IMG/VR virus record: IMGVR_UViG_3300044821_000131
Coordinates: 1 to 64,000 of that record
DNA length: 64,000 nucleotides
Strand: one strand, 5' to 3'
Part shown: in pieces, positions 2 through 51,886 of the stretch
Numbering within the stretch: position 1 is the stretch's first letter
Layout: each line of letters starts with the position of its first letter
The notes under the pieces: generated by a model
Told to the model about the DNA's origin: nothing
What the model saw: the letters and a program-made list of their open reading frames with translations, nothing else
Database searches by the model: none
Position numbers and translations under genes: made by a program

Positions 2-379
2 GTGACGATCGACAATTACGTGACGATCGGCGATGACGTGACGATCGGCAATCGCGTGACGATCGGCGATTACGTGGCGCTCGGCAATGGCGTGACGATC
101 GGCGATGACGTGGTTATTCCCAAAGCTGCGAACATCCAACTCCAATACGACCTGGTCACCATCAACAACTTGGGATCCCGGAACGCGCCCTTATCCGCTG
201 TTAAAATCAAGGATATCGTCCATGTCGCGACTGGGTGCTTCAGTGGCACGATTGATGAGTTTGATAAGAGGGTAAAGGAAGTGCATGGGGAGAGTGAGCA
301 TGGGACGGCATACCGAAATGTGATAAACTACGTAAAACTACACTTTTCGTCGCATGAGAATTTCAAAAGCCAACGTTAA
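2..379 (+). CDS. Hexapeptide-repeat (left-handed beta-helix) protein, paralog 1, 5'-truncated by window edge
   Basis: (T/A)(I/L)GxxV repeats, then the VIPKAANIQLQYDLVTINNLGSRNAPLSAVKIKDIVHVATGCFSG domain shared with the genes at 2714, 47230 and 51461. Confidence 0.85.
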   Translation: MTIDNYVTIGDDVTIGNRVTIGDYVALGNGVTIGDDVVIPKAANIQLQYDLVTINNLGSRNAPLSAVKIKDIVHVATGCFSGTIDEFDKRVKEVHGESEHGTAYRNVINYVKLHFSSHENFKSQR

Positions 380-569
380 ATCGGACGCTGGGGAAGACGG
401 CTCGGATTTTATTGACGTCGACTGTTTTTATAACTTTGTTCACAGTTATCGGGATGCCGTCGAGAGTTTGGATCTGGCGTTGCTCTATGCCCGGAGTGAA
501 AGTCCTTTGGCCAAAAAGTTGCGACAGATTTCTGACCTTATGGATGATATAGACATCGACGTTTAGGTT

Positions 570-737
570 ATGTACGACGAATCATTGGTGGCCAAGTACT
601 GTCCGTATTGCGGGCAGGAAATTGTCACCTACGCTCCGGAACTGTGGACCGCCAGAATGGACGCTTCGCCGGAATTGGAATCGAAAAATTTAATTCAGTA
701 CTACTGTGTAAATTGTGATCAGGCATTTTTTTCATGA
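570..737 (+). CDS. Small Zn-ribbon protein (55 aa, below ORF-track cutoff)
   Basis: Read directly: MYDESLVAKYCPYCGQ...YYCVNCDQAFFS*, two CxxC pairs; ATGA overlap with the ORF at 734. Confidence 0.6.
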   Translation: MYDESLVAKYCPYCGQEIVTYAPELWTARMDASPELESKNLIQYYCVNCDQAFFS

Positions 738-1816
738 GCAAAAAATTTAAATTCAAACCCAACAAGAATAAATCCGCTGGTGCTAGTAACGGCAGTCGAG
801 CAGACAAAGCCGAAGCTGTAGCGCGTCAGCTTGCGTTTGCTGCTGGCGTGAAACACCTCAGCTTGTCCGTTGATTCCGGAATCGTATCGGAAGCACTGGC
901 AGATCTATTTCATCTGTGTGATAGAGAAGGTTGGTCTGTACCGGAAGTAATCAAAGAGGGAATTGGTATTTGGGGATCCGAACGATGATATCTGTTTCAA
1001 TCAATACCTACAAATACGAAGAGTTGTCGGACTCGGCAAAAGAAAAAGCCCGAGACTGGTACCGAACCGCTTCGGCTGACGACAATTTCTGGTCTGAGTC
1101 TGTTCTTGAAGACGCTGAGAGTATTCTCAATATATTGGGCTATGAGTCGGTAAAGATATTTTTTCGCGGTTTCTGGAGCCAAGGCGACGGTGCGTGCTTC
1201 GAGGCTACTTGGCGCAACGGTACCGGACGTGCCGAGAAGTTGAAGGAATACGCTCCGAAAGACGAGGAGTTGCACCGCATAGCTGACGCTCTGCAAAAAG
1301 AAAGCGCGTGTTTCCCTTATATGTACATGAAGATTAAACATAGTGGACACTACTACCATGAGTACTGTACCAGTTTCGATGTCCGATTCACCGATAGCGA
1401 AGACAATGACATGGATACTTCTACGAGGGAGACTGGAGCGCAGACGGCGCAATGTGTGGAAGAACAACTGATCGATCTTTCTCGGGATCTGATGTGTTGG
1501 GTTTATAAATCGCTTGAGCAGGCGTGGGATTGGCAGAATGCAGATGAACAGGTCGCGGAGAGTATCTGCGCCAACGAATATGACTTCACAGTCGATGGTA
1601 AAAGATTTCGGTATTAAAACTATGGCAAAACTCGAAGTAACAACGGTATATCCGTTTATGGAGCTTTCACGTAAGGCGCAGGGCAAAGTATTGCGTCAGT
1701 ACAAACTCGACATGCGAAAATCGACTGGGCGCAAGCTGGCGGATATGGCGGCCATGTCGGCGCTGTCGCGGAGCGGTCTCAGATTTACTATCACCGGTGA
1801 ACTCTACACTGAATAA
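734..1816 (+). CDS. Run of hypothetical phage ORFs (734-988, 985-1617, 1622-1816)
   Basis: Tightly packed co-oriented ORFs with overlapping stop/start codons; no recognisable motifs. Confidence 0.6.
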
Positions 1817-1821
1817 CACAT

Positions 1822-2709
1822 ATGGCATTCGAAGCTAAAATCATCAAAGACTCAATTTGTAACGGTAATCGCCTGACCACGATGCAGCTGACGCATCCGC
1901 GCATCGTTCACGCTGAATTCAACACGCACAGGATGTTCTCCCGGAATGCTTCCAGCAGCCGGGCCATTCCGTTCGCTGTCGCGGTACAGAAGGTATTGGA
2001 AGATCCTTTTATTCCTGTATGGTGGGGTAAGAATCAGAAGGGCATGCAGGCTGTCGAAGAGATTGCTGGTCCGGAGAAGGACTTTGCTATTGTTCGTTGG
2101 TTGCACGCTCGAGATCAAGCTGTCGCACAAGCCAGTTTCTTTTCCGAATCACTCGACGTCCACAAGCAGATCGTCAATCGTCTGATTGAGCCATGGTCAT
2201 GGATCACCGTCTGCTGCACAGGCGACGCCGGCGCTTGGTCCAACTATTTCTCACTGCGCTGTCACAAGGATGCTCAGCCAGAGATTCAGAAACAGGCGTA
2301 CATGGCGCAGCTGGCCTATTATAATAGCAAGCCGGAGAATTTGGAACCCGGTGATTGGCATTTGCCGTACATTCTTTCAGAGGATTACGGATCGACACTT
2401 GACTCGACTTGCTTGAAGGCGCACCTCAAGAAAGTCTCGGTTGGACGCTGCGCCAGGGTTTCATATTTGACCCAAGAAGGTAAGCGTGATCTATCCAAGG
2501 ATGTCGAGCTGCATGATCGTTTATGCAAACAGATTCCGTTTCATGCCTCCCCGTTTGAACATGTGTGCGAGGCTATGGATGATAATGGCCGTTACGCTAA
2601 TTACGTCGGGTGGCGCTCGTATCGTTACATGATGCCGCATGAGTACGTTCGGGATTTCATGTGGAATCATCCAGACATTCTGGCGGAGATAAGTCGTTCC
2701 ATGGATTAA
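1822..2709 (+). CDS. thyX: Flavin-dependent thymidylate synthase (phage type)
   Basis: HAEFNTHRMFSRNASSSRAIP, RCHKDAQPEI, GRCARVSY and HASPFEH motifs typical of phage ThyX. Confidence 0.9.
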   Translation: MAFEAKIIKDSICNGNRLTTMQLTHPRIVHAEFNTHRMFSRNASSSRAIPFAVAVQKVLEDPFIPVWWGKNQKGMQAVEEIAGPEKDFAIVRWLHARDQAVAQASFFSESLDVHKQIVNRLIEPWSWITVCCTGDAGAWSNYFSLRCHKDAQPEIQKQAYMAQLAYYNSKPENLEPGDWHLPYILSEDYGSTLDSTCLKAHLKKVSVGRCARVSYLTQEGKRDLSKDVELHDRLCKQIPFHASPFEHVCEAMDDNGRYANYVGWRSYRYMMPHEYVRDFMWNHPDILAEISRSMD

Positions 2710-2713
2710 ATTT

Positions 2714-3304
2714 ATGAACCTATATCTAAAAGATTCATACGGTAATTGGAAATCACACAGCTACGAAACGTTATCCGATTTGGCCAGGGAGTTTGCCAAA
2801 CGTAACATAAAAATCGGCAATCGTGTGGCGCTCGGCAGTGACGTGGCGATCGGCAATCGCGTGGCGATCGGCGATTACGTGACGATCGGCTATGGCGTGA
2901 CGATCGGCGATTACGTGGCGATCGGCAATTTCGTGAAGATCGGCGATGACGTGGCGATCGGCAATTTCGTGAAGATCGGCAACGACGTGATGATCGGCAA
3001 TTTCGTGAAGATCGGCAATGACGTGGTTATTCCCAAAGCTGCGAACATCCAACTCCAATACGACCTGGTCACCATCAACAACTTGGGATCCCGGAACGCG
3101 CCCTTATCTGCTGTTAAAATCAAGGATATCGTCCATGTCGCGACTGGGTGCTTCAGTGGATCGATTGATGAGTTTGCGAAGAAGGTGAAGGAAGTGCATG
3201 GGGAGAGTGAGCATGGGATGCGTTATTTGGATGCTATTGAGCACATCCGTAAACATTTTGCGCGGGCTATATCAATTAAGTCTCATGACGAAAAAGGTGT
3301 CTAA
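2714..3304 (+). CDS. Hexapeptide-repeat protein, paralog 2 (12 repeats)
   Basis: N-terminal LYLKDSxGxWxxHSYETLSDLA block, 12 x 18-bp units at 2810-3025, shared C-terminal GSRN...GCF domain. Confidence 0.88.
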   Translation: MNLYLKDSYGNWKSHSYETLSDLAREFAKRNIKIGNRVALGSDVAIGNRVAIGDYVTIGYGVTIGDYVAIGNFVKIGDDVAIGNFVKIGNDVMIGNFVKIGNDVVIPKAANIQLQYDLVTINNLGSRNAPLSAVKIKDIVHVATGCFSGSIDEFAKKVKEVHGESEHGMRYLDAIEHIRKHFARAISIKSHDEKGV

Positions 3305-14054: not shown

Positions 14055-15527
14055 TTGAAAGGAAGCTTTGTGGGACGAAAGAAAACAGAAAAGACGAATC
14101 CGTTCGCGGGACCCAAGTCCTTTAACATCTTGGAAGACGGCGCCAATCTCGTGAGTGCAGTTCGAGAAACCTTAGCCCGTACCGAGGCCGATGTAATGCT
14201 TGCTGGGGATCCCAACAAGCCCAAGCTCATTCTCCCGGTACCGTCGTTCGCGTTCTGCACCGCCATCAAGGCCCGTGGTTTGGTGGCAGGTACAATCGTG
14301 GATATTATCGGTGCCGACGGTATCGGCAAAACCAGTCTCATGTTCACCATTATGGGCTGGGCGATGGCGGCCAATGGACCGTGCATGTATGTGGAGACCG
14401 AAGGCAAGCCGCTGGATCAGACTCGTATCGAAGCTTGTCTTCATACGGATCGTTCGATTGCCGGTAAGATGTACAAGGCGATCTACATGACACCTGCTCG
14501 CGAATTGCGTGAGGCTGTCAACAAAATCGAAGAGTGGCTTATTTCGATCCGCGCGCCAGGTACAGTCATACCTCCCACTGCCACTGCAGTCATCGGGCTC
14601 GACACGTTTAGCAAGTTGATGTCTCCCTCTGAGGCCGCAGGTTTTTCGGCTTACGACAGTGCGGGGGACAAGGAAAAGAAGAAACAGGAAGACAAGAAGA
14701 AGGCGTTCAAGGCTGCTAAGAAGGGCGTTGAACCCGAGAAGATCAAACAGAAGGAAGCTGAACCGGACGAGTCCAAAGAACTGGGTTCTGGCAGCAACTT
14801 CGGTCATGCCAAACTGTCGCAGGAATGGACTCGGCGTCTGCCCTATTATCTGTCCAAGTACAATGCTATTCTCATCTTGAACCGGCATCAAAACGACAAG
14901 ATCGACATGGGCGGTGGTGGAGGTGTGTTCCTGTCGGCGGAGGCCAAAGATGCGTTTAATCGTACTTCTATTGGTGGCCGGGCTTGGTTGCAGAGTGCGG
15001 CTTACGAATTCATTCTTTCTCGGAAAGACTTTGTTCGCGCGACTGTTTCAGGTATCAGCGTCAAGTTGGCCGCCAATATCAAGATGTCGGTTGCCAAGAA
15101 TGGCTGGGGTCCGTTGCAGGATGGTATGTATCGGCTTTCCTTAATGCCGCGGCGTAATACGGAGAGTCAGTACGAGCCGGTGATTGACTTTGATCCATTC
15201 CTTCCGGATATTTTGAAGGATCACAAGTTGATGAAGTTATCCATGAAGAACGCCAACACGGTGGTATGTTCGGATTTCAACGAGCAGGGCAGAGCCGAGG
15301 AGTACGATCTGTACACGTTTTGCTCTATGTTCTATCAACGTCCGGCATTGGTCGAAGATCTTGGCCGGCGTCTCGGTTTTGCTCACTACGACGATCGTAG
15401 TATTTTCCCCAAGTTTATGACTGTACCCGTACCGACGATTGATACTCCATCGTCCGAGGAGTCTGTGGAAGCTCCAGTTTCGTCCGAGGATACAGCTAGT
15501 GTAGCAGTTGCTTCAGATCCAGCATGA
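14055..15527 (+). CDS. RecA/UvsX-like recombinase (start may be GTG 14070)
   Basis: Walker [14 protein letters not shown], Walker [24 protein letters not shown] motif, VAKN. Confidence 0.8.
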
Positions 15528-22221: not shown

Positions 22222-22881
22222 TCGCGGAACCCCACCTTTGGCGTTTGCACAACAAGAGGCACGTCGCCGTGGCGAACTTGACGCCGTACAACCAAATTCT
22301 CAACCCATGGAAACCGATCCGATTTCTCCTGCATCTCCACCCTCGCCACGCATGAGCGGGCGCTTGTTCCCTGTGACATTGACCTATAACCCTCCTCCGG
22401 GCACACACACTCCCGGTGGTGATCCACTGCCCAGTATCAGCATAAAGTTCAAAGCTCGATCCGTGGATATCAAGGAGCATTTCATTTCCTTGAATCACAG
22501 CCCCGACATCGACATTGAATTTACAGCGTTTGCCGAAGATCTGATTTGTAAGATCGGCGAGAAGGCCTATCCGGTGAGTTGGGTTGGATCTACTTTCAGC
22601 TTTCCAGACAACGACGTATATGGTATTCAGTTGTTGCGTCGGCAAGAACCGCCCGGTACATCAGGATCGTGACGGTGGTGTAAACTGAACTATCAATGAT
22701 AAAAAATGGTCGCATCGAAATTGGCAAGACCCCTAGCGTTGTTACTGGCGCCTGTTCTACCCGCATCTTGGAGGGTGAACCAGTCGGCGATCATGAACAC
22801 CCGAATGATCCCGAATTCAGAAAACTTGCCTCTCTGATGGTGTTACCAACTCCCGACGATGTGAAGGAAATCGATGGCTGA
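22202..22881 (+). CDS. Two hypothetical ORFs (22202-22672, 22696-22881)
   Basis: Directly upstream of, and overlapping, the putative portal gene. Confidence 0.55.
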
Positions 22882-33827: not shown

Positions 33828-33934
33828 GGAAATAGGCCGCACAGCCTTTGCTCTGAACCGTCTAAAGGAAATTTTGCCGAACAGTTGATTCTACCAACTT
33901 GGTTGGTTTATTTGCCAGCGCAAATTTAAAAAAC

Positions 33935-33964
33935 TTGCACACCACAACTCGATTCTGATATAAA
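33935..33964 (+). promoter_or_regulatory. Sigma70-like promoter, extended -10
   Basis: TTGCAC-N18-TATAAA with TG at -15/-14, after an A-tract. Confidence 0.55.
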
Positions 33965-34110
33965 TGACAGCATAGATGTCATAGCAGATGTCCTAAGTTC
34001 CACGTGGAATTCTCTTGGCTGGTCCAGATTGTGACATAATCTATGACACCTTTAGCGTTAACTGTCTCGAAGTATGACACTGTTTTGATCGAATTTGATG
34101 CCGGTGTCAT
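33964..34110. repeat. Cluster of TGACA/TGTCA motifs and short palindromes
   Basis: ATGACA-N7-TGTCAT (33964-33982), ttccacgtggaa, agattgtgacataatct, tatgacac twice (34042, 34073), gtgtcat (34104). Confidence 0.6.
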
Positions 34111-39262: not shown

Positions 39263-39787
39263 ATGAAGATACATCTTTTGGTTGGCCAGCGAAAAGAGAG
39301 CTATGCTGGCGAGTTTGCTCCTGAAGTTTTGGAAGCCATAGACGAATTCGGTAATTGCGAAAATGCCGGCGAATGGCTGCAGGGTAAGATGAAGGAGTAC
39401 CGCGTTGACGCTTCTTTTGAAGCACTAGTCATAGTTACATTGGAAGTTCCTACACTTAAAATTTTGGAACGTTTACGTCCGAATAATGAACCTATTGTCG
39501 CCGAGGTGGTAGACACAGATTTATTGACCCTATATCTAAAAGATTCAGACGGTATTTGGAAATCACACAGCTACGAAACGTTATCCGATTTGGCCGGGGA
39601 GTTTGCCAAACGTAACATAAAAATCGGCAATGACGTGAAGATCGGCAATTTCGTGAAGATCGGCAATGACGTGACGATCGGCAATCGCGTGGCGATTGGC
39701 AATGACGTGATGATCGGCAATCGCGTGACGATCATTGATAACACATGTATACCTCCGGAGCTTATCATTCAAAAAAGACTAAGCTGA
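39263..39787 (+). CDS. Chimeric gene: unrelated N-terminus plus hexapeptide module (paralog 3, 6 repeats, no C-terminal domain)
   Basis: LYLKDSDGIWKSHSYETLSDLA block begins mid-gene; 18-bp units at 39620-39727; ends at a broken attC. Confidence 0.75.
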   Translation: MKIHLLVGQRKESYAGEFAPEVLEAIDEFGNCENAGEWLQGKMKEYRVDASFEALVIVTLEVPTLKILERLRPNNEPIVAEVVDTDLLTLYLKDSDGIWKSHSYETLSDLAGEFAKRNIKIGNDVKIGNFVKIGNDVTIGNRVAIGNDVMIGNRVTIIDNTCIPPELIIQKRLS

Positions 39788-41207: not shown

Positions 41208-43357
41208 ATGAGCAATCCGCGTGATCCCCTTACACCTGAACAAATCAAGCACTGGCGTGACATGCTTGTCGGTATGTTCGGTCCTTGGGCCTTCATAATG
41301 CCAGAGGAGGACATCCAGCGTATGAGGGAGCATTTACAAAGTGATTTGGATTCACATGAAATCAATGACTCAAAAGAATAAACGGAAACGGTTGGTGTGA
41401 CTTGTTATGCCACGAGAACACTCAATGTCGTGCGAATGGCCAGAGGGTTGTAGCTGTGGAGCATCAGCGTGGAATCGATTGGAGCGTGAGCGTGACTGGT
41501 ATCGCTGTCGCGTAAAACTGTTGGAACAGCACAAGTCAATGCTCCGAGAGCCAGAACTAACGCTGGTATGTGATATCATGGCAAACGGCCAACTAATGCC
41601 CGACCCAGACGGGAAACGATATGGGCCTAACGCAGACTTGTCAGGCATATCGATAACAAAACTGACATAAAACATATGACTGAAACTCCACAAACCAAAA
41701 AAACTCTGCTGCCGAAATACGAAGACGGAAGCGGATATAGGATCGAAAGAGAACTGTGTGTCTTCTGCCACAAACCGCTGCTCGACTCATTCCACTTTGC
41801 CAGCGATGACGGTAAGCAACACTGGCACACATACTGCGCAAACAGAAAAGGCGTAACGTCCCGGATGAGCCGCCCGCGATAGGCGACTCACGAACACCAA
41901 AAGATTTATGATCAAAAAGAAAGCGTCAACGCGGGTTGGCTCCATCGGGCGGGTTATGCCTCAGTTGGTGATATGCGACCATCATGGGCATGACTACTGC
42001 GAGGGATGCCAACATAACGAACCCCACAAAGCAAACAGTGAGGACGACGGCGAACTCTGCACATGCGGCGGAGTCTGTGGGGCAAACGGGCCAAACTTCA
42101 ACGTGCGCTGCCTGCGACATAACGCCTCAAGCTGAGGCACGTCGGACTAAAGACTTTATGAAACCTGTGAAACCAAAAATCCGTAGCGATAAAAACAAAC
42201 CGTCCAACCGACGTTGCCTCCGGCGCGGTGTTAGGCGACACGATTGGATAAACGGCCCCGATATGATTCCGAAGCCTGTAAAAAAGGCGATCAAAGAATG
42301 GCGGGCCATCACAAGTCCAATGGAGAAAATCGGATTCATCCTGCACGCTTTCGACCCGACAATACAGTTCCGCTGTCCCGACAGTAACCGAGTGTTTGAT
42401 ATGTCAATAAGTGCCGTCAAACGCATAAATGCCGCCTTGTCGCCTAACGCCTCAAGCTGAGACATCGGCGACCTGCGATGTCCAGCAACCCAAAACCTTA
42501 TGCTCAAAACTGAAAGCGCCAATACCGATTGTTCTCCAGCGCCGGGTTCGGGTGCTGGCTTGGATAACTGAATGGGTCGAAGCAATCTGGAAGGCGTTTC
42601 GACCGCCAAAACGGAAGCGGCTGGAACTGCGGCTCTGCACATGGACTGCCGCAGACAAGCTGATTCGGGAAGGTGGCGGCGCTTGGACGGTAGCCGCCGA
42701 AGATGACCACAACATGGTGCTTGGGTGTGTGTGGTTGGAACGCCTGGAACAATATCCCGACTTCTCGAAGCAGCAGTCGAACGGTGAAGTCAGCGATGGC
42801 GGGACGCTGACTTCCGAATTGAAATCCAAACGCGAACCCGCCATTCGCTGAATTGTTATGGCACTAATACACGAAGAAACTGAACACGAGCTTGGAGCGA
42901 AACTGATGGTATCGGAACGCCAAGAAGGTGAAACCCGCGCCCCGTGGAAAATCATCACGCTCGACGCAGACCGATTCGAGAATCTAACACCAACGGAACT
43001 CCGAAAGCTCGGAAAGTGGCTCATACACCAAGGGAGGCGCATCGGAAGTGAATACAAGTCCAACGGTGCGTTGAAGGCCAAGAGCCATAACGAAAAGCTG
43101 ATCGACAGCGGAAGGAAATTATGAGCTTTAAAAACGGCGGATATAACAACGGGCTTGGTCGGCCAAAGGCGAAGAAGCTGTTCGCTCCGGCGCGTTGTTC
43201 TACGGCGTGGTTGAGCGTGGAATCCCGTTGGCCAGTCAAGGGTGAACTCGAAACCAAAAGATGCCTGACAATCCTAGACGCGGTAATAGAAGGAAAACGC
43301 GCCCTCCAATGTGGGGCGTGGCGCGTAACAATAACTCAGTGCAACGGAGCGCCGTAG
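41208..43357 (+). CDS. Small cassette ORFs (41208-41381, 41407-41670, 41676-41882, 41908-42135, 42158-42460, up to 42429-42851, 42858-43124, 43121-43357)
   Basis: One ORF per inter-attC segment; no function recognised. Confidence 0.6.
41851..41959 (-). other. attC site
   Basis: Plus strand GCGTAAC-gtcccg-gatgagccgcccgcg...cgcggg[t]tggctc[c]atc-gggcgg-GTTATGC. Confidence 0.82.
42117..42236 (-). other. attC site
   Basis: Minus strand GCCTAAC-ACCGC-GCC[G]GAGG-CA[A]CGTCGG...CCGACG-TG-CCTCAGC-TTGAGGC-GTTATGT. Confidence 0.88.
42442..42552 (-). other. attC site
   Basis: Minus strand CCCGAAC-CCGGC-GCT[G]GAGA-ACAATCGG...CCGATG-TCTCAGC-TTGAGGC-GTTAGGC. Confidence 0.85.
42776..42861 (-). other. attC site with a short deletion next to R''
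   Basis: Plus strand GTCGAAC-ggtga-agtcagcgatggcggg...cccgcca[t]tcgctgaatt-GTTATGG. Confidence 0.75.
43085..43203 (-). other. attC site
   Basis: Minus strand GTAGAAC-AACGC-GCC[G]GAGC-GA[A]CAGC...GCTG-TC-GATCAGC-TTTTC-GTTATGG. Confidence 0.82.
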
Positions 43358-43405
43358 AACAGTTAATTAAACCAACGTTGGTCGTTTAACTCATACGAAA
43401 GCCGA

Positions 43406-43434
43406 TTGCCAAACGGGGCCTCAGTAAGTAGTAT
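43406..43434 (+). promoter_or_regulatory. Sigma70-like promoter for the RNAP-fragment genes
   Basis: TTGCCA-N17-TAGTAT, 6 nt before ATG 43441. Confidence 0.6.
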
Positions 43435-43440
43435 TCAAAA

Positions 43441-44985
43441 ATGACCGACGACGTAGCCGCACCCCCGGGAGTGGAAATTACAGCTTGGGATGACTTTCCC
43501 AAGAAACGCCAGCAGATTCTCACTGGCGCTAAAACTGCCCTGCAAGAATCATTTCCCCAATCCTATGGCGGGGTGCGGCTTGAACTACACGACCTCGATT
43601 ACGACAATCCCAAGGAATTCACATTGTCGGAACAGAAGGACGCCCTGATGAAGAACCAGTTTCTCCATCACAAACTCAAGGGTACGTTAAAATTATTCGA
43701 TGAGAAAACCGGTGCGTTGCTGGATCAGAAAACTCAGACGCTCATGCGAGTTCCTTACCTTACCGAGCGTGGTACATTTCTACATAATGGTAACGAGATC
43801 ACCACCAACAGCCAGGCTCGGCTCATGCCGGGCATCTATACGCGGCGTAAGAATTCTGGTGAAATTGAGTCTCAGGTGAACGCCAAGCGTGGATCGGGAT
43901 CATCCTTCCGTGTACGTCTCGAACCCGAGTCCGGTTTGTTTAAGGTCGACATCGGTCAGAGTAGTCTGCGGCTTTATTCGTTGTTGAAAGATATTGGAGT
44001 GTCCGATCAGCAGATTGAGAAGACTTGGGGACCAGAACTGTTGAAGAAGAATCAGGACTCCTACGATGCCAGGGTGTTCGAGAAGGCTTACGATCGATTG
44101 GTGCGGCGTCCCGATCCGAAGGCCACGCGCGAGCAGAAGGTAGAGGCAATCAAGCAGGCTTTGGACAATACGCAGGTGGATCGGTCGGTGGTCATGAGGA
44201 CATTGCCGAATCTGTTCGCCACCAAGTTCTCCTCGATGTTGGCATTCGATCCTACCATGCCTCGGCCGCAGAGCGAGAAGAAGGAATTCAATCACGACGA
44301 TTGCCTGATGCTGGCGGAGCTGTTGAATCAGAAGTTTCATGCTGGCATTCCGTTGGATGCCCCGACCTCAGAGATCGTAGCCATGGTGATGGGTGAAATA
44401 CAGAAGCTCATGCCGTCGGTGAATGAGCAGATGCTGGCACAGACTGTAGGGCAACAGCAGAAAGAGGCGCGATCGAAACAAGGTTATCTGATGTTGAATT
44501 TCGAACCGGAAGACGCCATGAGGTTTTCCAAGTGGTCAAGGCAGAATATCCCGGATTCGAAACTGGGTGCGTCCGGACGTGAAGACACCCCGCATATCAC
44601 TTTGCGTTGGGGTATCAACACGGGTGATATTGGGCACCTGAAATCATTCTTCTCAGAACAGTCCCCAGTCCAAGCCACGCTCGGCGCTCTGACTCGATTT
44701 CCTGGCGTCGACGACGGAAACCAAGATGCACTAGTGGCGCCGGTAGAGTCCGAATCCATTCACAAGCTACACCATGCTGTCGTATCGACGTTTCATTCTC
44801 ATCTCGGACCCGTCAAGTTCAATACCTACCGGCCACATGTTACTCTAGCCTATTTAAGGCGTGGCGAGATGCCGGAATTGGAAGGTAACAAGGAGTTTCA
44901 TGGCCAGACATTCCAGTTGAAGAAGGTGGTGTATTCCAATCCTCGCACCAGCTCGTATATTGACATTCCGCTGGGTACAAATTAG
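43441..44985 (+). CDS. RNA polymerase beta subunit N-terminal fragment fused to a 2H phosphoesterase domain
   Basis: VPYLTERGTFLHNGNEITTNSQARLMPG matches RpoB IPLMTxxGTFIINGxERVVVSQLxRSPG; C-terminal PHITL (44593) and PHVTL (44836). Confidence 0.82.
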   Translation: MTDDVAAPPGVEITAWDDFPKKRQQILTGAKTALQESFPQSYGGVRLELHDLDYDNPKEFTLSEQKDALMKNQFLHHKLKGTLKLFDEKTGALLDQKTQTLMRVPYLTERGTFLHNGNEITTNSQARLMPGIYTRRKNSGEIESQVNAKRGSGSSFRVRLEPESGLFKVDIGQSSLRLYSLLKDIGVSDQQIEKTWGPELLKKNQDSYDARVFEKAYDRLVRRPDPKATREQKVEAIKQALDNTQVDRSVVMRTLPNLFATKFSSMLAFDPTMPRPQSEKKEFNHDDCLMLAELLNQKFHAGIPLDAPTSEIVAMVMGEIQKLMPSVNEQMLAQTVGQQQKEARSKQGYLMLNFEPEDAMRFSKWSRQNIPDSKLGASGREDTPHITLRWGINTGDIGHLKSFFSEQSPVQATLGALTRFPGVDDGNQDALVAPVESESIHKLHHAVVSTFHSHLGPVKFNTYRPHVTLAYLRRGEMPELEGNKEFHGQTFQLKKVVYSNPRTSSYIDIPLGTN

Positions 44986-45711: not shown

Positions 45712-47163
45712 ATGCTCACTTACGAAAAGATTTTCGCGCAGGCTAAAAAAGCTTTCGTCGAATCCAAATCTGCTACTGCCGAACCGGCTCAGCCCACAGA
45801 GGATACCGTTCCGGTCAATCCTGACGCGATCTTGGCTATCACCAGCAAGTTGTTAGCTGTGACTAGAGGTGAGGCGGATCCGGACGAACGTGATAGCCTT
45901 CAATTTAAAAGAGTTCACACTCCCGATAAACTGTTCGCCGAACGCATTAAGATGGATGCCCATAAACTGCGTAAGATCGCGATGCGTCGCGTTTCGCGTG
46001 TCCGCAATCTATCACCTATCGGTGTGGCGCATTTCGATCCTTACACGGGAGGATTGATCGTTGGGCATCCGTTATCCAGTCCTTTGGAAGAGACGAACCC
46101 GTTATCGCTTACGGAGCAGGCGAGACGCGTGACGCAGATGGGACCTGGTGGTATTCCTTCCTCGGATTCGATCACGGAAGAGGCACAATCTGTGTCTCCT
46201 TCGATATTCGGTTTCTTGTCAGCGATCGAAGGGCCGGAATGCTTTTCAGATGACACAGAGGTGTTCACTTATAACGGGTGGAAGTTTTGGAGTAGCATTA
46301 CAAATTCGGATCGTCTGGCCTGTCGTGATGAACACGGGCAAATGTTTTTCTCGGCCCCTAGTCGCCTAATAGCTGCACCTTATACTGGACCTATGGTCCA
46401 AGCTGACGCTCGGATGTTTCATTTAAAGGTTACGCCGAATCACAGGTTACTTGTCGCTAAGCACATGAGAAAATCACAAGTTCCCACGACTTGGTTTAAA
46501 ATTTTTGCCGGTGATTTTTCTGATCATAATGTTTTGCGATTCGACACCGGCAGCCTTCCATATTCTGGAAATTCTGTTTTAACATGGTCTCTACCCGATT
46601 ATGCTCTTGATAAGTTCATTCCGGAATACTTGTTCGATGCACCAATTTCTGCCCGACAGAAGTTGTTTGAAGCCCTACTTTTGGGAGATGGTCGGATTAA
46701 CAAAAACCACACCAATTTTACCAGCAGCAGCAAACAATTGGCTACTGATTTTGAACGTTTGGCCGTAGGCTTAGGACACACCACCAATTTTAGAAAATAT
46801 TTCGACAAGCGACCCCATGTACAAGCTTGGACTTATGAGATTAGTATTTTGAAGTTGCGCGAGCGCGTGGCGGCTAGAAAACCCAAGTCTGGTGTTGGCG
46901 GGCTGTTTTCGATAGTCGATTATTCTGGTATTGTGTATTGTGCCACGGTTCCCGGCGGCCTGTTGCTGACTCGACGTGGCGTATCTACCGGTGTATGGTC
47001 AGGCAATAGTGAACGCATCGGTGTAGATACGCGTCTCGCTTGGGGCGCTAACGTTGGCTCAGACGGAAAAATTTATCAGAAACTCTTGAATCGCAGGACT
47101 GGTCAGCATCAGTATGTGTCACCGGACGATCTCGTCGGTCGCACGGTTGGTATCCCTGAATAG
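45712..47163 (+). CDS. RNA polymerase beta subunit middle fragment, intein-containing
   Basis: DERDSLQFKRV (cf DDIDHLGNRR), LEETNPLSLTEQARRVTQMGPGGI (cf [24 protein letters not shown]), FGFLSAIEGPE-SERIG (cf YGRICPIETPEGPNIG). Confidence 0.88.
   Translation: MLTYEKIFAQAKKAFVESKSATAEPAQPTEDTVPVNPDAILAITSKLLAVTRGEADPDERDSLQFKRVHTPDKLFAERIKMDAHKLRKIAMRRVSRVRNLSPIGVAHFDPYTGGLIVGHPLSSPLEETNPLSLTEQARRVTQMGPGGIPSSDSITEEAQSVSPSIFGFLSAIEGPECFSDDTEVFTYNGWKFWSSITNSDRLACRDEHGQMFFSAPSRLIAAPYTGPMVQADARMFHLKVTPNHRLLVAKHMRKSQVPTTWFKIFAGDFSDHNVLRFDTGSLPYSGNSVLTWSLPDYALDKFIPEYLFDAPISARQKLFEALLLGDGRINKNHTNFTSSSKQLATDFERLAVGLGHTTNFRKYFDKRPHVQAWTYEISILKLRERVAARKPKSGVGGLFSIVDYSGIVYCATVPGGLLLTRRGVSTGVWSGNSERIGVDTRLAWGANVGSDGKIYQKLLNRRTGQHQYVSPDDLVGRTVGIPE
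46240..47007 (+). mobile_element. Intein (256 aa) with partly deleted LAGLIDADG domain
   Basis: Starts CFSDDTEV, VTPNHRL, only one ALLLGDG motif, ends VYCATVPGGLLLTRRG...WSGN, +1 Ser. Confidence 0.88.
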
Positions 47164-47192
47164 CACTATTTCTGACGGAACACTTAACAGTC

Positions 47193-47222
47193 ACGCGCAG
47201 TAATCCCTTACTGCGCGTTTTT
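47193..47222 (+). terminator. Intrinsic terminator hairpin, copy 1
   Basis: acgcgcagtaa-tccc-ttactgcgcgt-tttt; identical at 51424. Confidence 0.8.
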
Positions 47223-47229
47223 GCATTTT

Positions 47230-47901
47230 ATGAACCTATTATATCTAAAAGATTCAGACGGTAATTGGCGATCACATAGCTACGAAACGTTATCCGATTT
47301 GGCCGGGGAGTTTGCCAAACGTAACATAAAAATCGGCAATCGCGTGGCGATCGGCAATTACGTGACGCTCGGCAATTACGTGACGATCGGCAGTGACGTG
47401 ACGATCGGCAATTACGTGACGATCGGCAGTGACGTGACGATCGGCAATTACGTGACGATCGGCAATCGCGTGGCGATCGGCAATTACGTGACGATCGGCT
47501 ATGGCGTGACGATCGGCTATGGCGTGACGATCGGCAATCGCGTGAAGATCGGCAATGACGTAAAGATCGGCAATGACGTGACGATCGGCGATGACGTGGA
47601 GATCGGCGATGACGTGATGATCGGCAATTACGTGAGGATCGGCAATTACGTGGTTATTCCCAAAGCTGCGAACATCCAACTCCAATACGACCTGGTCACC
47701 ATCAACAACTTGGGATCCCGGAACGCGGCCTTATCTGCTGTTAAAATCAAGGATATCATCCATGTCGCGACTGGGTGCTTCAGTGGCACGATTGATGAGT
47801 TTGAGAAGAGGGTGAAGGAAGTGCATGAAGAGAGTGAGCATGGGATGCGTTACGGTCTGGTTATTGAAGTTATTCGTAAATGGTTTTCGGTACAACGGTA
47901 A
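47230..47901 (+). CDS. Hexapeptide-repeat protein, paralog 4 (18 repeats)
   Basis: 18 x 18-bp units at 47329-47652; shared N- and C-terminal blocks. Confidence 0.88.
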   Translation: MNLLYLKDSDGNWRSHSYETLSDLAGEFAKRNIKIGNRVAIGNYVTLGNYVTIGSDVTIGNYVTIGSDVTIGNYVTIGNRVAIGNYVTIGYGVTIGYGVTIGNRVKIGNDVKIGNDVTIGDDVEIGDDVMIGNYVRIGNYVVIPKAANIQLQYDLVTINNLGSRNAALSAVKIKDIIHVATGCFSGTIDEFEKRVKEVHEESEHGMRYGLVIEVIRKWFSVQR

Positions 47902-47929
47902 ACAAAAACAAACAACTGAAAGGAAACAT

Positions 47930-48355
47930 ATGAGTCTATTACAAGCATTATTCTGGCCGTGGCGTTTCGTCTCGGAGGTCATTGATACCCATCCAACCGC
48001 CGGACAGATACGTCAGGATCTGCAGCAGAATCGTCCGATAGTCGTATCCAATAACACCGGTGTGGCTGTGGGACTACGCCTCGACGGCACGGACAAAGTC
48101 TCACCGCTGGAGGACGTAATCACGCGCAAGGTTGGAAGTCCCGAGGAGCTGCCTCTGGCCTTGGCCTTCGGTGAAGGTGTTGTGTCCGGGTATGGTCTGG
48201 CGGTGAAACGTGCAATCAATCTTCGACGCTCGTCTCTTGCCGAGGATAATAAGTTGCGCCGAGCCGCCTTAGCCGCAGATGCAGCGGCGAGCGAACCGGA
48301 GCCGGCGTCGGAAGCGTTCGTTGGATCAGAATTGTTGCCGGCCTCTGCTGTCTAG
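47930..48355 (+). CDS. Hypothetical protein
   Basis: ATG after an A-rich leader; precedes the AAA operon. Confidence 0.55.
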   Translation: MSLLQALFWPWRFVSEVIDTHPTAGQIRQDLQQNRPIVVSNNTGVAVGLRLDGTDKVSPLEDVITRKVGSPEELPLALAFGEGVVSGYGLAVKRAINLRRSSLAEDNKLRRAALAADAAASEPEPASEAFVGSELLPASAV

Positions 48356-48372
48356 TCGAGATTACACTCAAC

Positions 48373-48408
48373 AAACGCCCGGATCGACTTTTGTCTTTCC
48401 GGGCGTTT
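48373..48408 (+). terminator. Hairpin
   Basis: aaacgcccgga...tccgggcgttt. Confidence 0.55.
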
Positions 48409-48420
48409 CTCTATTTAATA

Positions 48421-50004
48421 ATGAATTTTACTGAGAAATTGGCCGTCTATCTCAAGGCGGCGTATCCCATAATTGGCGTAGAGACGTACGAAGAAGGGCG
48501 TCTGTTGGAGACTGGAATTTATCCATTAAAAATGCCGGTTGAGCGCCGTCTATACCAGTGGGATTGCGCCACCGGTATGGTCGACACAACTGATCGAAAT
48601 AAGCCGGTGAAGCTGGACAAGACCGCGGATCCAATGGCTATGTTGGCCATCGTCTCTGGTAACGTTGAGAGCGCCATTTTCGTGCTAAAGGACATCCACG
48701 CGCATTTCAACAACGTCCGGCACATACGGATGCTTCGGTCTATGATTAAGACGTTATCGAACCGTAAGCAGACCATCGTGCTTGTGGCGCCGAGGCTGAA
48801 CCTTCCGTTTGATCTCCAGAAGGATGTTCAGATGATGGACTTTGCGCTGCCTACCAAAGCTGAATTGTCGGCCATGACAGAAACTTTTATCGAAACTTCG
48901 ATTCGGCGTAATGAGAACGCCGCGTACAAGGAGTTCCGTTTGTCGTTGTCCGATCGCGAGGCCATCGTCGAAGCAGCCACCGGCATGACTAGTATTGAGT
49001 TCTGTAACGCCTTGTCGTCTTGCTCCATTGGACAGAGCCAAGATAATGGCAAGCTTACGATGACCGGTGATTTCCCGAAACGCATCTTCGACGAGAAAAT
49101 TATTAATCTGAAGAATGGATTACTGGAGTACGTACCGGAGGCTGGTGGTTTCGACACGATCGGTGGTCTAACCCCAGTCAAGGAGTGGGCGAAACAACGC
49201 CGTCTCGGTTACGAGGAAGTCGCGCGCAAGGCGCACCTGCCATATCCTAAAGGCTGTCTCTTGGTAGGCTTGCGCGGATGCGGCAAATCGGTTCTGGCCA
49301 TGGCTATCGCTCAAGCATTCAACTTCCCGTTGTTCAAACTGGATATAGGCAAGATCTTCGGTAGCAAGGTGGGTGAATCCGAAGGCAATGTTAGAGAACT
49401 CATCCGTCTATTGGAAGGTCTCGGTCGTGCCGTCATCTACATGGACGAAATTGAGAAAGGTCTCAATAACAGTGCGGCGTCTGGTCAAGGTGATTCCGGC
49501 ACAGGTTCCCGGGTATTCGGGACTCTGATCTCTTGGATGGCCATTAAGAAGTGTCCGGTGTTTCTTATCGGTACAGCTAACAATATTGATGTCCTGCCAC
49601 CTGAGTTGATTCGTAAAGGTCGGTTCGATGAGATATGGTGGGTGGATCTGCCGACGTCCGAGGAGCGGGTGGATATCTTCAACAAACTGCTACAACACAA
49701 GTTTCAACGTGAGTTTGAGGTGACTGGCGTCAAAGACAAACTGATAACCAGCACCAAGGATTACAGTGGCGCCGAGATTGAGGCGGTTATTGAGGCTGCG
49801 TTGTATGAGATGTTGTCTTCCAAGGATAAGAATTTCAGGAAGATTCTGGAGTCGACGATCGAGCGTACCGAGCCACAGGCTCAGATCAATCCAGAGTATA
49901 TAAACAAGATGCGGGAGAAGTCTAAGGCCGGTTATCGCAAGGCTAATGATCCCGAAGTTCATAATGCAAGTGTATCAAACATGTATCGGAAGGTTCAGTT
50001 ATGA
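48421..50004 (+). CDS. AAA+ ATPase, Ycf46-like
   Basis: Degenerate first domain (IFVLKDIH), Walker A GLRGCGKS, Walker B IYMDEIEK, TANNIDVLPPELIRKGRFDE. Confidence 0.9.
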   Translation: MNFTEKLAVYLKAAYPIIGVETYEEGRLLETGIYPLKMPVERRLYQWDCATGMVDTTDRNKPVKLDKTADPMAMLAIVSGNVESAIFVLKDIHAHFNNVRHIRMLRSMIKTLSNRKQTIVLVAPRLNLPFDLQKDVQMMDFALPTKAELSAMTETFIETSIRRNENAAYKEFRLSLSDREAIVEAATGMTSIEFCNALSSCSIGQSQDNGKLTMTGDFPKRIFDEKIINLKNGLLEYVPEAGGFDTIGGLTPVKEWAKQRRLGYEEVARKAHLPYPKGCLLVGLRGCGKSVLAMAIAQAFNFPLFKLDIGKIFGSKVGESEGNVRELIRLLEGLGRAVIYMDEIEKGLNNSAASGQGDSGTGSRVFGTLISWMAIKKCPVFLIGTANNIDVLPPELIRKGRFDEIWWVDLPTSEERVDIFNKLLQHKFQREFEVTGVKDKLITSTKDYSGAEIEAVIEAALYEMLSSKDKNFRKILESTIERTEPQAQINPEYINKMREKSKAGYRKANDPEVHNASVSNMYRKVQL

Positions 50005-51068
50005 TTGATGTTTTTCCGTCTGCTAGTCAGACTCCAAAGTTGTCGGAAGCGGCTCAGGCCGCGTTGCAGCGTACGTTTCAAGAAGGTTGTATTATTATTC
50101 TCAGCATCGGCAAGAAAAGCTGGAGCACCAAGCTCACTCCCGACCTGCTCGGCCTCGACGCGCTTCCCCCCGCCTGTAAAGGTCGATGGGATCTATTGCA
50201 GGAGGAATCCGATCCTGAGAACCCTGAAGAGCAGGACCTGACCAAGAAGGATCCGGCAGCGAAGATCAGTAGTATCGAAGGCAAGGCTCGAAATTACCTG
50301 CGCAAGCAATCTCTGTCCTTCGGCAACGAAGCCCGGGCCAATTTTCGCTTTGTTCGCACGGATATGATGATCGATACTCTGTTGAGTTTGCAGGAGTTCA
50401 AAAAGCAGTACTTCGATGCGGTCGATGAATTGATTTTGGCACTGCCAGCTATCAAAGAGAATCTCAAGCTTAACAAGCCGAAGCAGTGGGAGAAGTTGAA
50501 AGACTTTTATGACGTGGGTAGCGATTTTATCAAGAAGCAGTATTACTTCGTATATGAATCCATGGCCATGGCCTTCCCGAAAGCTTTGGACAGCATGGAT
50601 ATCGAAGATCTGCTTCGGCGACAAACAATCGAGGGTCGGGTTACTGACGAGTATCGGGCCAAGGCGGAGCTGGTACTGCGTGAGCAGTCGATGCAGGCCA
50701 AAGAAACGGCCAAGGGATTCGTTGAGGACACGATCCGGGCGATACGTGGCCAAGCCGTCAAGGCTTTTCAGGAAATCGGGGCTAAGATTCAAAAGGGTGA
50801 CGCGCTTAATAAGAAGAATATCGAGAAGATTCGGGAGGCAGTTCAGTATGTTAAACGTATGGACTTTCTCGGAGACCGTGACTTCGTAACTCATATGTCG
50901 AACGTGGAAAACATGTTGGATGGCACCTCCACCTTCAAGGACAACGATCAAGCCGTGGCCGAATTGGATAAGATTCTGAAGCAGACCGTGGCGTTTGTGG
51001 GGAGTACGACTGACTCCGCAGTAGCGTCCATGACTGAATCGTATTTCGCCAGAAACTTGTCCTTATAG
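50001..51068 (+). CDS. Helical AAA-associated protein (possibly DUF3150-like)
   Basis: ATGA-coupled to the AAA gene; family guess from context and overall pattern only. Confidence 0.4.
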   Translation: MIDVFPSASQTPKLSEAAQAALQRTFQEGCIIILSIGKKSWSTKLTPDLLGLDALPPACKGRWDLLQEESDPENPEEQDLTKKDPAAKISSIEGKARNYLRKQSLSFGNEARANFRFVRTDMMIDTLLSLQEFKKQYFDAVDELILALPAIKENLKLNKPKQWEKLKDFYDVGSDFIKKQYYFVYESMAMAFPKALDSMDIEDLLRRQTIEGRVTDEYRAKAELVLREQSMQAKETAKGFVEDTIRAIRGQAVKAFQEIGAKIQKGDALNKKNIEKIREAVQYVKRMDFLGDRDFVTHMSNVENMLDGTSTFKDNDQAVAELDKILKQTVAFVGSTTDSAVASMTESYFARNLSL

Positions 51069-51092
51069 TTTGGTCGATTTGACGGTTGTCAT

Positions 51093-51120
51093 TTGACGAC
51101 GCATTCATCCGTGCTATCTT
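51093..51120 (+). promoter_or_regulatory. Sigma70-like promoter
   Basis: TTGACG-N16-TATCTT with extended TG. Confidence 0.45.
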
Positions 51121-51175
51121 GATTGCACGTTAAGTACCTGGTGTTGATGTCGACATCCGGGTCTAAATTTAAAAT

Positions 51176-51406
51176 ATGAATGCAAAAGTATCGTCTGATT
51201 GTGCCGAGTTGTCGTCTCCTTCGTCCGTAGTCCAGTTCTTCATTAAGTTGTTTGAAGACAAGCCCGTGTCCGATATCCGGCGTGCTCTCCTTGCAGTCAA
51301 TAGTGGCGGCTATGCCGATCTATTGCCGAATGAGAGCACGGCCTGTCTGGCGGGCAGTGGTCTCATTGGTCTGCTGGTGGACCGAAAAGCCTGTTTAGTC
51401 GAATAG
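51176..51406 (+). CDS. Hypothetical protein
   Basis: ATG after an AT-rich leader. Confidence 0.5.
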   Translation: MNAKVSSDCAELSSPSSVVQFFIKLFEDKPVSDIRRALLAVNSGGYADLLPNESTACLAGSGLIGLLVDRKACLVE

Positions 51407-51423
51407 TGGAATTATCAACAAGT

Positions 51424-51453
51424 ACGCGCAGTAATCCCTTACTGCGCGTTTTT
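51424..51453 (+). terminator. Intrinsic terminator hairpin, copy 2
   Basis: Identical to 47193-47222; identity extends 40 bp through the ATG. Confidence 0.8.
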
Positions 51454-51460
51454 GCATTTT

Positions 51461-51886
51461 ATGCTCCTATATCTAAAAGATTCAAACGGTATTTGGAAAT
51501 TACACAGCTACGAAACGTTATCCGATTTGGCCAATGAGTTTGCCAAACGTAACATAAAAATCGGCAATGACGTGACGATCGGCGATTACGTGGCGCTCGG
51601 CAATGACGTGGCGCTCGGCAATCGCGTGAAGATCGGCAATGGCGTGGTTATTCCCAAAGCTGCGAACATCCAACTCCAATACGACCTGGTCACCATCAAC
51701 AACTTGGGATCCCGGAACGCGCCCTTATCTGCTGTTAAAATCAAGGATATCGTCCATGTCGCGACTGGGTGCTTCAGTGGCACGATTGATGAGTTTGATA
51801 AGAAGGTGAAGGAAGTGCATGAAGAGAGTGAGCATGGGATGCGTTATCTGAAGGCCATTAAATATATCAAAGATCAATTAACATGA
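51461..51886 (+). CDS. Hexapeptide-repeat protein, paralog 5 (5 repeats)
   Basis: 5 x 18-bp units at 51557-51646; shared N- and C-terminal blocks. Confidence 0.88.
   Translation: MLLYLKDSNGIWKLHSYETLSDLANEFAKRNIKIGNDVTIGDYVALGNDVALGNRVKIGNGVVIPKAANIQLQYDLVTINNLGSRNAPLSAVKIKDIVHVATGCFSGTIDEFDKKVKEVHEESEHGMRYLKAIKYIKDQLT

What the first reader, a model, noticed from the sequence alone, without database searches (positions are those of the whole stretch)
2..51886. Five dispersed near-identical hexapeptide-repeat genes with variable repeat number
Seen: copies at 2, 2714, 39263, 47230 and 51461 share a nearly identical 5' block and an about 190-bp 3' block. The 18-bp array length differs (at least 6, 12, 6, 18, 5 units), and the sequences diverge abruptly after gagcatggga into unrelated tails. 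Inference: ongoing gene conversion or a mobile module that tunes beta-helix length. Such long repeats could also drive genome rearrangement through the phage RecA-like protein.
Basis: partly seen in the sequence, partly recalled or inferred. Interest (0 to 1): 0.62.

Follow-up and report, generated by a model that had tools for sequence, protein, structure and literature searches.

The report
Six-copy phage beta-helix repeat gene family
An uncultivated 204-kb soil/peat phage carries six copies of a small rod-shaped repeat protein whose shared core looks homogenised by copy-to-copy recombination, while rod length, exposed surface and last helix differ; the protein family is widespread in phages and its function is unknown.

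Summary
The repeats are real, with corrections. The window is the first 64 kb of a 204,257-bp virus record, and the family has six copies. The "copy at 2" is the 3' half of a gene that wraps the contig ends. A sixth copy lies at 78,902-79,693. The copy at 39263 is an in-frame fusion that lacks the 3' block.

Each protein has a 31-aa N-cap, 5-24 hexapeptide units, and a 65-aa conserved block plus a final helix. The "unrelated tails" are that final helix. It has diverged (47% nt identity against 95.6% just before it) but keeps the family-invariant Tyr.

Gene conversion is supported. I see patchwork exact tracts of 109-179 nt, many four-gamete incompatibilities, and almost no synonymous differences. 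Among the 82 units nearly all variation is nonsynonymous at three exposed residues (pi 0.44 against 0.017 at third codon positions). No reverse transcriptase is present.

The C-terminal domain is absent from Pfam and NCBIfam. It occurs in 655 cluster representatives, mostly viral, always behind some beta-solenoid. A model supports self-association through this domain and the variable helix.

Unit-number heterogeneity could not be tested, because the public contigs break at every copy. The 61-bp end overlap lies inside a tract shared with copy 6, so the circle closure and the 17-unit count are provisional. Function is unknown; I judge a non-enzymatic binder rod most likely.

The parts
1..379 (+). 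3' half of the wrap-around copy (cW). Array units run to 109, the C block is 110-304, and the tail helix plus stop is 305-379. The 5' half is at G000 203907-204257.
   Evidence: The 61-nt exact end overlap lies inside the array. Window 1-113 is 100% identical to G000 79192-79304 in copy 6.
2714..3304 (+). Copy 2, 196 aa. N block 2723-2806, 12 units 2807-3022, C block 3023-3217, tail 3218-3304.
39263..39787 (+). Copy 3, 174 aa. Unrelated 88-aa N-terminus 39263-39526. N block 39533-39616, where the family ATG reads TTG and the upstream stop reads CAG. Six units 39617-39724, followed by an unrelated 21-aa end. No C block.
47193..47218 (+). Terminator-like hairpin (11 pairs plus a T run), ending 11 nt before the copy-4 start codon.
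   Evidence: The identical 26-mer occurs only here and before copy 5.
47230..47901 (+). Copy 4, 223 aa. N block 47242-47325, 18 units 47326-47649, C block 47650-47844, tail 47845-47901.
51424..51449 (+). The same terminator-like hairpin, before copy 5.
51461..51886 (+). Copy 5, 141 aa. N block 51470-51553, 5 units 51554-51643, C block 51644-51838, tail 51839-51886.
14055..15527 (+). UvsX-like recombinase gene, a candidate enzyme for the copy-to-copy exchange. Its link to the family is inferred, not shown.
   Evidence: phrog_97, E 1.7e-11

Best explanation
This is a six-member paralogous gene family in one uncultivated jumbo phage.

Shown or modelled: each product is a short left-handed beta-helix rod built from V-x-I-G-N/D-x units. 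An N-terminal hairpin-helix caps one end. A conserved, phage-specific C-terminal domain of four strands and two helices caps the other. The family's distribution in other phages is also shown.

Inferred from patterns in one assembly: homologous recombination between the copies, plausibly by the phage's own UvsX-like recombinase, keeps the stretch from the start codon to the codons for SEHG almost identical. This is concerted evolution. Unequal exchange in the 18-bp register changes the number of units without breaking the frame. Selection keeps two things different between copies. One is the three outward-facing residues of each unit. The other is the last helix, which lies just beyond the conversion boundary.

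Inferred from a model and from indirect evidence: the model places that last helix in a two-fold self-association interface. I therefore read the proteins as non-enzymatic, dimeric binder rods of different length and surface, made from the replication-gene region and probably aimed at host or defence factors.
For: Copies and architecture.

Core identity: the N block shows 2-9 mismatches in 84 nt and the C block 4-14 in 195 nt, with at most 4 synonymous codon changes per pair.

Boundaries: homology starts at the start codon and ends after GAGCATGGG. Identity drops from 95.6% to 47%.

Mosaic pattern: exact tracts are cW/c6 179 nt, c2/c5 138 nt, c4/c6 113 nt and c5/c6 109 nt. cW and c6 have 26 mismatches in nt 1-224 and then none in 179 nt, P about 3e-10. 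Four-gamete incompatibilities are 7 of 10 and 18 of 28.

Units: Val is GTG in 75 of 76, Ile is ATC in 74 of 75 and Gly is GGC in 80 of 80, against 37%, 46% and 31% genome-wide. Diversity (pi) is 0.017 at third positions and 0.44 at positions 1-2 of the exposed codons.

Fold: AF2 model with pLDDT 85.5; the beta-helix part aligns to LpxA-type helices at rmsd 1.2-1.7 A over 36-41 residues.

C domain: 655 representatives at E <= 1e-3; G, C and Y are invariant. The same domain (TM 0.86-0.93) follows hexapeptide, YdcK, pentapeptide and bactofilin-like solenoids in clusters that are 56-100% viral.

Self-association: ipSAE 0.43 against a best control of 0.01. That mark was reached by 20 of 30 solved homo-pairs and 1 of 23 single chains. 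Two of three runs passed. The partner's pLDDT was at least 76 and the runs agreed in at least 33% of contacts. The interface covers residues 73-88 and 124-139.

Copy number: summed contig depth over the repeat is about 210-220 against 31-34 for unique sequence.
Against: - All the sequence comes from one metagenome assembly. Exact tracts of 109-179 nt are as long as or longer than common assembly k-mers, and bubble merging could make paralogs look more alike or mosaic.
- No read or contig bridges an array.
- The circle closure lies inside the tract shared with copy 6.
- No close relative genome was found for a comparative test.
- The self-association score only just reaches the mark, in two of three runs, and the job used three copies whereas the calibration used two.
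- The arrays are nearly neutral in charge, so a DNA-mimic reading has no support.
- There is no expression, virion or binding evidence.
- The C domain has no significant match to any solved fold; the best is Z 5.2, which is noise level.
Confidence: 0.62

Rival explanations
1. Assembly artefact. The copies exist, but the near-identity, the mosaic tracts, the unit numbers and the circular join are produced by short-read assembly of repeats.
For: The contig ends lie in a 179-nt tract shared with copy 6. An independent k=31 assembly of the best-holding run breaks at every copy. The only outside contig, L011, is a hybrid.
Against: - Six intact in-frame genes each have unique flanks and a tail of their own.
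- The depth ratio of about 6-7 fits six copies.
- Variable sites inside the blocks lie mostly under 40 nt apart, so single reads link them.
- The codon pattern of the units cannot be created by an assembler.
Confidence: 0.15
2. Recent duplication only. The copies are young and are conserved by purifying selection, without gene conversion.
For: Core identity is high. Copies 4 and 5 also share 63 nt of upstream sequence including a hairpin.
Against: The tails inside the same domain, and all flanks, are saturated. Synonymous sites are conserved too. Site patterns are mutually incompatible with a single tree. Different pairs share different exact tracts.
Confidence: 0.08
3. A self-mobile cassette, homing or transposing, that inserts between genes.
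For: The copies are dispersed between conserved replication genes. The 5' boundary is sharp, about 10 nt before the ATG.
Against: No nuclease, transposase or integrase domain is present; Pfam gives only Hexapep. The 3' boundary lies inside a folded domain. I saw no shared terminal repeats.
Confidence: 0.04
4. Targeted hypermutation of the diversity-generating retroelement type writes the variable positions.
For: All seven variable sites of the unit could be adenines of one notional template unit.
Against: The 204-kb record has no reverse transcriptase. Only 5 of 16 possible codons occur at unit position 6, and none keeps A at its first base. There are 40 unit types among 82 units, which points to shuffling of a few types.
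Confidence: 0.02
5. The 18-bp arrays act at the DNA level, as iteron-like or GATC-cluster sites, and the coding frame is secondary.
For: There is nearly one GATC per unit, 4-22 per gene. The copies sit among replication genes. Third codon positions are frozen.
Against: Homologous proteins with the same three-part architecture but different unit DNA occur in many phages. The frames are intact in all six copies. GATC is not rare elsewhere in the genome, at 6.5 per kb.
Confidence: 0.05
6. An ordinary hexapeptide acyltransferase.
For: Pfam Hexapep matches reach E 2e-30, and there are weak LpxA/LpxD NCBIfam hits.
Against: All NCBIfam scores are far below the family cut-offs. The 82 units contain no His and no loop insertions. 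Unit number ranges from 5 to 24. The same C domain follows pentapeptide solenoids in other phages.
Confidence: 0.04

Closest known systems
PHROG families 5353, 20532 and 7964 (phage proteins of unknown function)
   Same: The N block plus array matches phrog_5353 (E down to 7.6e-36). The C block matches phrog_20532 (E about 1e-14) and phrog_7964.
   Different: These families carry no function. Five to six copies in one genome is unusual: Aeromonas phage Ahp1 and Lactobacillus phage LfeInf each have only one C-domain copy.
Left-handed beta-helix (hexapeptide) acyltransferases such as LpxA, LpxD and QdtC
   Same: The repeat periodicity and the modelled fold of the rod.
   Different: No catalytic His, no loops, free variation in length, a different C-terminal domain, and a predicted two-fold rather than three-fold contact.
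YdcK-family beta-solenoid proteins (NF040481, PF18836)
   Same: Many relatives that share the C domain have a YdcK-like N-terminus and solenoid.
   Different: The window's copies have another N-cap and a classical hexapeptide. They were not tested against YdcK itself. YdcK's function is also unknown.
Pentapeptide-repeat proteins Qnr and MfpA (from my own knowledge: beta-helix rods that dimerise at the C-terminal end and mimic DNA)
   Same: A solenoid rod plus a C-terminal self-association element. Sister clusters carry pentapeptide arrays in front of the same C domain.
   Different: The handedness and cross-section differ. The arrays here are nearly neutral, net -2 to -11. There is no evidence for binding gyrase or any other DNA enzyme.
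Concerted evolution of dispersed paralogs by gene conversion (general principle, for example rRNA operons and tuf genes; from my own knowledge)
   Same: A homogenised core with sharp boundaries, mosaic tracts and low synonymous divergence.
   Different: Here it is combined with in-frame tandem-unit number change and a strong excess of nonsynonymous variation at exposed residues.

Membership tests
Hexapeptide / left-handed beta-helix repeat (PF00132) | Six-residue periodicity with an aliphatic residue and Gly at fixed positions | tested here: met
   Pfam E 6.5e-9 to 2e-30, above the cut-off in all five window copies. Unit composition: V 76/82, I 75/82, G 80/82.
Hexapeptide / left-handed beta-helix repeat (PF00132) | Left-handed beta-helix fold | tested here: met
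   Model residues 35-75 align to LpxA-, QdtC- and LpxD-type helices at rmsd 1.2-1.7 A, Z 4.5-5.6. The model's pLDDT there is only 60-70.
Hexapeptide acyltransferase (enzyme) | Catalytic His and a score above the curated family cut-off | tested here: not met
   No His occurs in any of the 82 units. The best NCBIfam hit is 57 bits against a cut-off of 231.
Hexapeptide acyltransferase (enzyme) | Homotrimer with active sites between subunits | tested here: inconclusive
   In the three-copy model only two copies touch with confidence, through the C domain. A model cannot exclude a trimer.
Phage solenoid proteins with the GSRN...GCF C-terminal domain (unnamed; phrog_20532) | C-terminal domain with invariant Gly-Cys and Tyr, and near-invariant Gly-Ser, Phe, Val and His | tested here: met
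   The profile of alignment A1 hits five of the six copies at E 1e-32 to 1e-34. Copy 3 lacks the domain.
Phage solenoid proteins with the GSRN...GCF C-terminal domain (unnamed; phrog_20532) | A solenoid array directly upstream of the domain | tested here: met
Diversity-generating retroelement target | A reverse transcriptase and a template repeat in the same genome | tested here: not met
   PF00078 search of the whole 204-kb record found nothing, while the control genomes did match.
Free-standing homing or mobile gene cassette | An encoded nuclease or transposase and defined element ends | tested here: not met
   Only Hexapep domains are present. The 3' homology ends inside the domain.
Pentapeptide-repeat DNA mimics (Qnr/MfpA) | Pentapeptide periodicity and a strongly acidic surface | tested here: not met
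   No PF00805 hit in the window copies. Net array charge is +2 to -2 in five copies and -11 in copy 6.

The most novel reading that the evidence does not exclude
The family is a phage-encoded, modular binder scaffold. The exposed face of the beta-helix is diversified by shuffling and selecting a few unit types, using Tyr, Arg, Asp, Asn and Phe at the variable positions. The rod length is reset by unequal exchange. The unconverted last helix keeps each paralog pairing only with itself. One genome would then field several dimeric rods against different host or defence targets, a repeat-protein counterpart to variable binding proteins.
Probability: 0.18. Interest if true: 0.75.

Novelty: new member of a known kind. 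Interest (0 to 1): 0.45.

Why it matters
The C-terminal domain defines a large, almost purely viral protein family. It is missing from Pfam and NCBIfam, and no function has been tested for it. This genome offers a natural series of 5, 12, 17, 18 and 24 units on one conserved frame.

The codon evidence suggests that the exposed face of the rod is under diversifying selection. That makes the family a good entry point for finding what these common phage proteins bind.

There is also a practical warning. The "direct terminal repeat" used to call this record complete lies inside a repeat shared with another locus.

Tried and rejected
- **Near-identical phage records:** none found.
- **Close relatives of the family or of a neighbouring gene:** none in IMG/VR or JGI metagenomes. 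The nearest phages are about 30% identical and lack the family.
- **Word-based protein search:** swamped by ordinary hexapeptide transferases. Only P0007, P0009, P0010 and P0011 were informative.
- **Single-sequence fold of copy 2:** useless, pLDDT 43.
- **PDB searches:** nothing by sequence and nothing significant by Foldseek. In the wide structural search the C domain reached only Z 5.2 (SsgA-like) and Z 4.3 (Pur-alpha). That is within the tool's stated noise, so I make no PC4/Whirly-like claim.
- **tblastn of the C domain against phage records:** too insensitive, 4 records.
- **Reads:** only Logan contigs were available. None bridges an array. The three reported joints (side 30-82 letters, likeness 85) are what repeats produce, and I do not interpret them.
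- **Ideas tested and dropped:** the retroelement idea; the idea that copies 2 and 4 moved together with a ThyX-like neighbour, since the two upstream proteins are unrelated; and multi-copy as a general trait of the family.
Full report
**What the window is.** The window is bases 1-64000 of a 204,257-bp IMG/VR virus record flagged as having direct terminal repeats. Most long ORFs lie on the + strand. They include a DNA polymerase, a primase-like gene, a helicase, a UvsX-like recombinase, a ThyX-like gene, an exonuclease-like gene and a weak terminase hit. No public phage record is close to it. The nearest IMG/VR contigs share about 30% identity in a neighbouring protein. A peat metagenome run holds 95% of the sampled words of the queried 5.9-kb stretch, at about 31-34x depth. 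Two rhizosphere runs from other studies hold pieces with 0-1 differences at 2-4x.

**Checking the observation.** Tandem 18-bp arrays lie at 1-112, 2813-3026, 39623-39733, 47332-47652 and 51560-51646. Translation gives five related products. A search of the whole record finds two more pieces. One is at the far contig end (203901-204257). The other is a sixth copy at 78902-79693.

The last 61 bases of the contig equal the first 61 and lie inside an array. Joining the ends gives an intact 222-aa gene, which I call cW. The "copy at 2" is therefore half a gene.

Unit counts are 17 (cW, if the join is right), 12, 6, 18, 5 and 24.

Each protein has three parts:
- a 31-aa N block
- the array
- a 65-aa C block ending in SEHG, followed by 15-30 further residues

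Copy 3 differs. Eighty-eight unrelated residues run in frame into the N block. There the family ATG reads TTG and the usual upstream stop reads CAG. The copy ends after six units with no C block.

**How alike, and where it stops.** The 84-nt N block differs by 2-9 bases between copies. The 195-nt C block differs by 4-14, with at most four synonymous codon changes per pair. Upstream homology begins about ten bases before the ATG. Only copies 4 and 5 share more: a 63-nt stretch with an identical 26-nt terminator-like hairpin that occurs nowhere else in the genome.

Downstream, homology ends right after GAGCATGGG in the five copies that have the C block. Mean identity is 95.6% in the C block. It is 47% (32% at protein level) in the next 14 codons.

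Those codons are not an unrelated tail. In the AlphaFold model (pLDDT 85.5, built on a 140-sequence alignment) they form the second helix of the C-terminal domain. They contain the Tyr that is invariant across the wider family. So the boundary cuts through a folded domain.

**Evidence for copy-to-copy exchange.** Different pairs of copies share different long exact tracts:
- cW/c6: 179 nt inside the arrays
- c2/c5: 138 nt
- c4/c6: 113 nt
- c5/c6: 109 nt

cW and c6 differ at 26 of their first 224 bases and then at none of the next 179 (P about 3e-10). Among informative sites, 7 of 10 pairs in the N block and 18 of 28 in the C block show all four combinations. At this low divergence that points to recombination rather than repeated mutation.

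These patterns, the near absence of synonymous change in the core, and the saturated tails and flanks together fit concerted evolution by gene conversion. They do not fit recent duplication alone. A self-reinforcing conversion boundary, probably held in place by selection on the last helix, explains why the break is at the same base in the five copies that have the C block. This last step is inference.

**The units.** Across the 82 units almost all variation is nonsynonymous.
- Val is GTG in 75 of 76 units, Ile is ATC in 74 of 75 and Gly is GGC in 80 of 80. Genome-wide those codons make up 37%, 46% and 31%.
- Nucleotide diversity is 0.017 at third codon positions and 0.037 at positions 1-2 of the three core codons. 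It is 0.44 at positions 1-2 of the three exposed codons.
- The exposed residues are T/K/A/M/E/R at unit position 2, N/D/S/Y at position 5 and D/Y/R/G/F at position 6.
- There are only 40 distinct units among the 82.

Homogenisation should erase all kinds of differences equally. The surviving differences at exposed residues therefore imply selection for a varied surface, or a targeted mutator. I tested the retroelement version of a mutator. The record has no reverse transcriptase, and the codon spectrum is too narrow. I dropped that idea.

**What the protein is.** Pfam sees only hexapeptide repeats. Scores against the NCBIfam acyltransferase models are far below their cut-offs. The arrays hold no His and no loops. 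An enzyme is therefore unlikely.

PHROGs has three matching families, all of unknown function.

An exhaustive search with the C-terminal 93 residues found 655 cluster representatives at E <= 1e-3. They share a motif with invariant Gly-Cys and Tyr. The domain sits at the C-terminal end of small proteins, or stands alone at 66-90 aa. It follows arrays of hexapeptide, YdcK-type or pentapeptide repeats of very different lengths. Thirteen of the top 148 hits have the same three-part layout as the window's genes. One relative, P0009, pairs the N block and array with a DUF5758-like end instead.

Structure-based searches of predicted models give the same picture. They show that the clusters are 56-100% viral and include Bacillus, Listeria, Staphylococcus, Aeromonas and Lactobacillus phages.

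Neither Pfam nor NCBIfam has the domain. No solved structure matches it significantly.

Two other phages that I checked carry one C-domain copy each. Five or six copies in one genome is therefore unusual.

**Self-association.** I ran a three-copy complex prediction.
- Score: ipSAE 0.43 against a best control of 0.01.
- Calibration: that mark was reached by 20 of 30 solved homo-pairs and 1 of 23 single chains.
- Runs: two of three passed; the partner's pLDDT was at least 76; the runs agreed in at least 33% of contacts.
- Caveats: my own alignment was used, and the job held three copies rather than the calibrated two.

The confident contacts are symmetric between two copies. They involve residues 73-88 and the last helix, 124-139. 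The model supports self-association through the C domain but does not show it. If it is right, the helix that escapes conversion lies in the interface, and that could keep paralogs from pairing with each other. This is inference.

**What could not be settled.** Only k=31 contigs were available for the runs. They stop at every copy: 46500-47222, 47823-51453, and 51817 onward. Unit-number heterogeneity and recombinant junctions are therefore untested. Summed depth over the repeat is about 6-7 times the unique depth, which fits six copies.

The end overlap lies inside the 179-nt tract shared with copy 6. The circular join and the count of 17 units rest on a repeat that an assembler cannot resolve from short reads.

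The only close outside sequence is a 1,082-bp ENA contig (L011). It joins the copy-6 upstream flank (97% identical) through six units to a cW-type C block and tail. It then continues into a RumA/TrmA-like methyltransferase that this genome lacks. It is either a recombinant locus in a related strain or a chimeric contig. A rhizosphere run shows the same tail variant.

**Verdict.** The finding is real. The gene-conversion reading is the best supported one, the mobile-module reading is not supported, and function remains open. My working model is a set of non-enzymatic dimeric rods with diversified surfaces, encoded among replication and nucleotide-metabolism genes. Relatives sit in similar neighbourhoods: next to ERF and an exonuclease in L014, and near RecA in phage LfeInf. 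I put about 0.6 on the evolutionary mechanism together with the architecture, and much less on the binder function.

Noticed in passing
window 54572-54991 (+): A full-length tmRNA gene. Rfam RF00023 scores 103 bits against a gathering score of 47. ARAGORN gives the tag peptide ARYTGGSSPARPSLG.
   Followed up: partly
window 22874-25624 (+): A 916-aa ribonucleotide-reductase-like gene with an intein splicing domain hit at residues 141-423. Its tblastn relatives include intein-containing RNRs of Nodularia phages.
   Followed up: partly
window 45712-47163 (+): The gene just upstream of copy 4 has a weak RNA polymerase Rpb2 domain 3 hit (22.3 bits, cut-off 21) and a weak phrog_85 hit. It may be a fragment of a split multisubunit RNA polymerase beta subunit, as in some jumbo phages.
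   Followed up: no
window 1-61 and G000 204197-204257: The 61-bp direct terminal repeat behind the record's completeness call lies inside an 18-bp repeat array, within a 179-nt tract that is identical in copy 6. The closure is plausible, since it restores an intact gene, but it is not independent of the repeat.
   Followed up: yes
L011 (ENA ERZ27245393 k141_2149879) 1-1082: A hybrid gene: copy-6 upstream flank, six units, and a wrap-copy C block and tail. It is followed on the minus strand by a RumA/TrmA-like methyltransferase fragment that is absent from this genome. It is either a recombinant relative or a chimeric contig.
   Followed up: partly
window 47193-47218 and 51424-51449: An identical 26-nt GC-rich hairpin plus T run precedes copies 4 and 5 only. 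These two copies share 63 nt of upstream sequence, which suggests a more recent exchange that included the terminator.
   Followed up: yes
window 2771-3058, 47290-47685 (-): Long antisense ORFs inside the arrays. They are by-products of the repeat, not genes.
   Followed up: no
window 32001-34000 and 42001-44000: AT skew rises to about 0.19-0.20 in these two stretches, against roughly -0.09 to 0.14 elsewhere. The cause was not examined.
   Followed up: no
P0009 (Logan contig, 294 aa): The same N block and hexapeptide array are joined to a DUF5758-like C-terminus instead of the GSRN...GCF domain. The N-cap plus rod is therefore reused with other end domains.
   Followed up: partly
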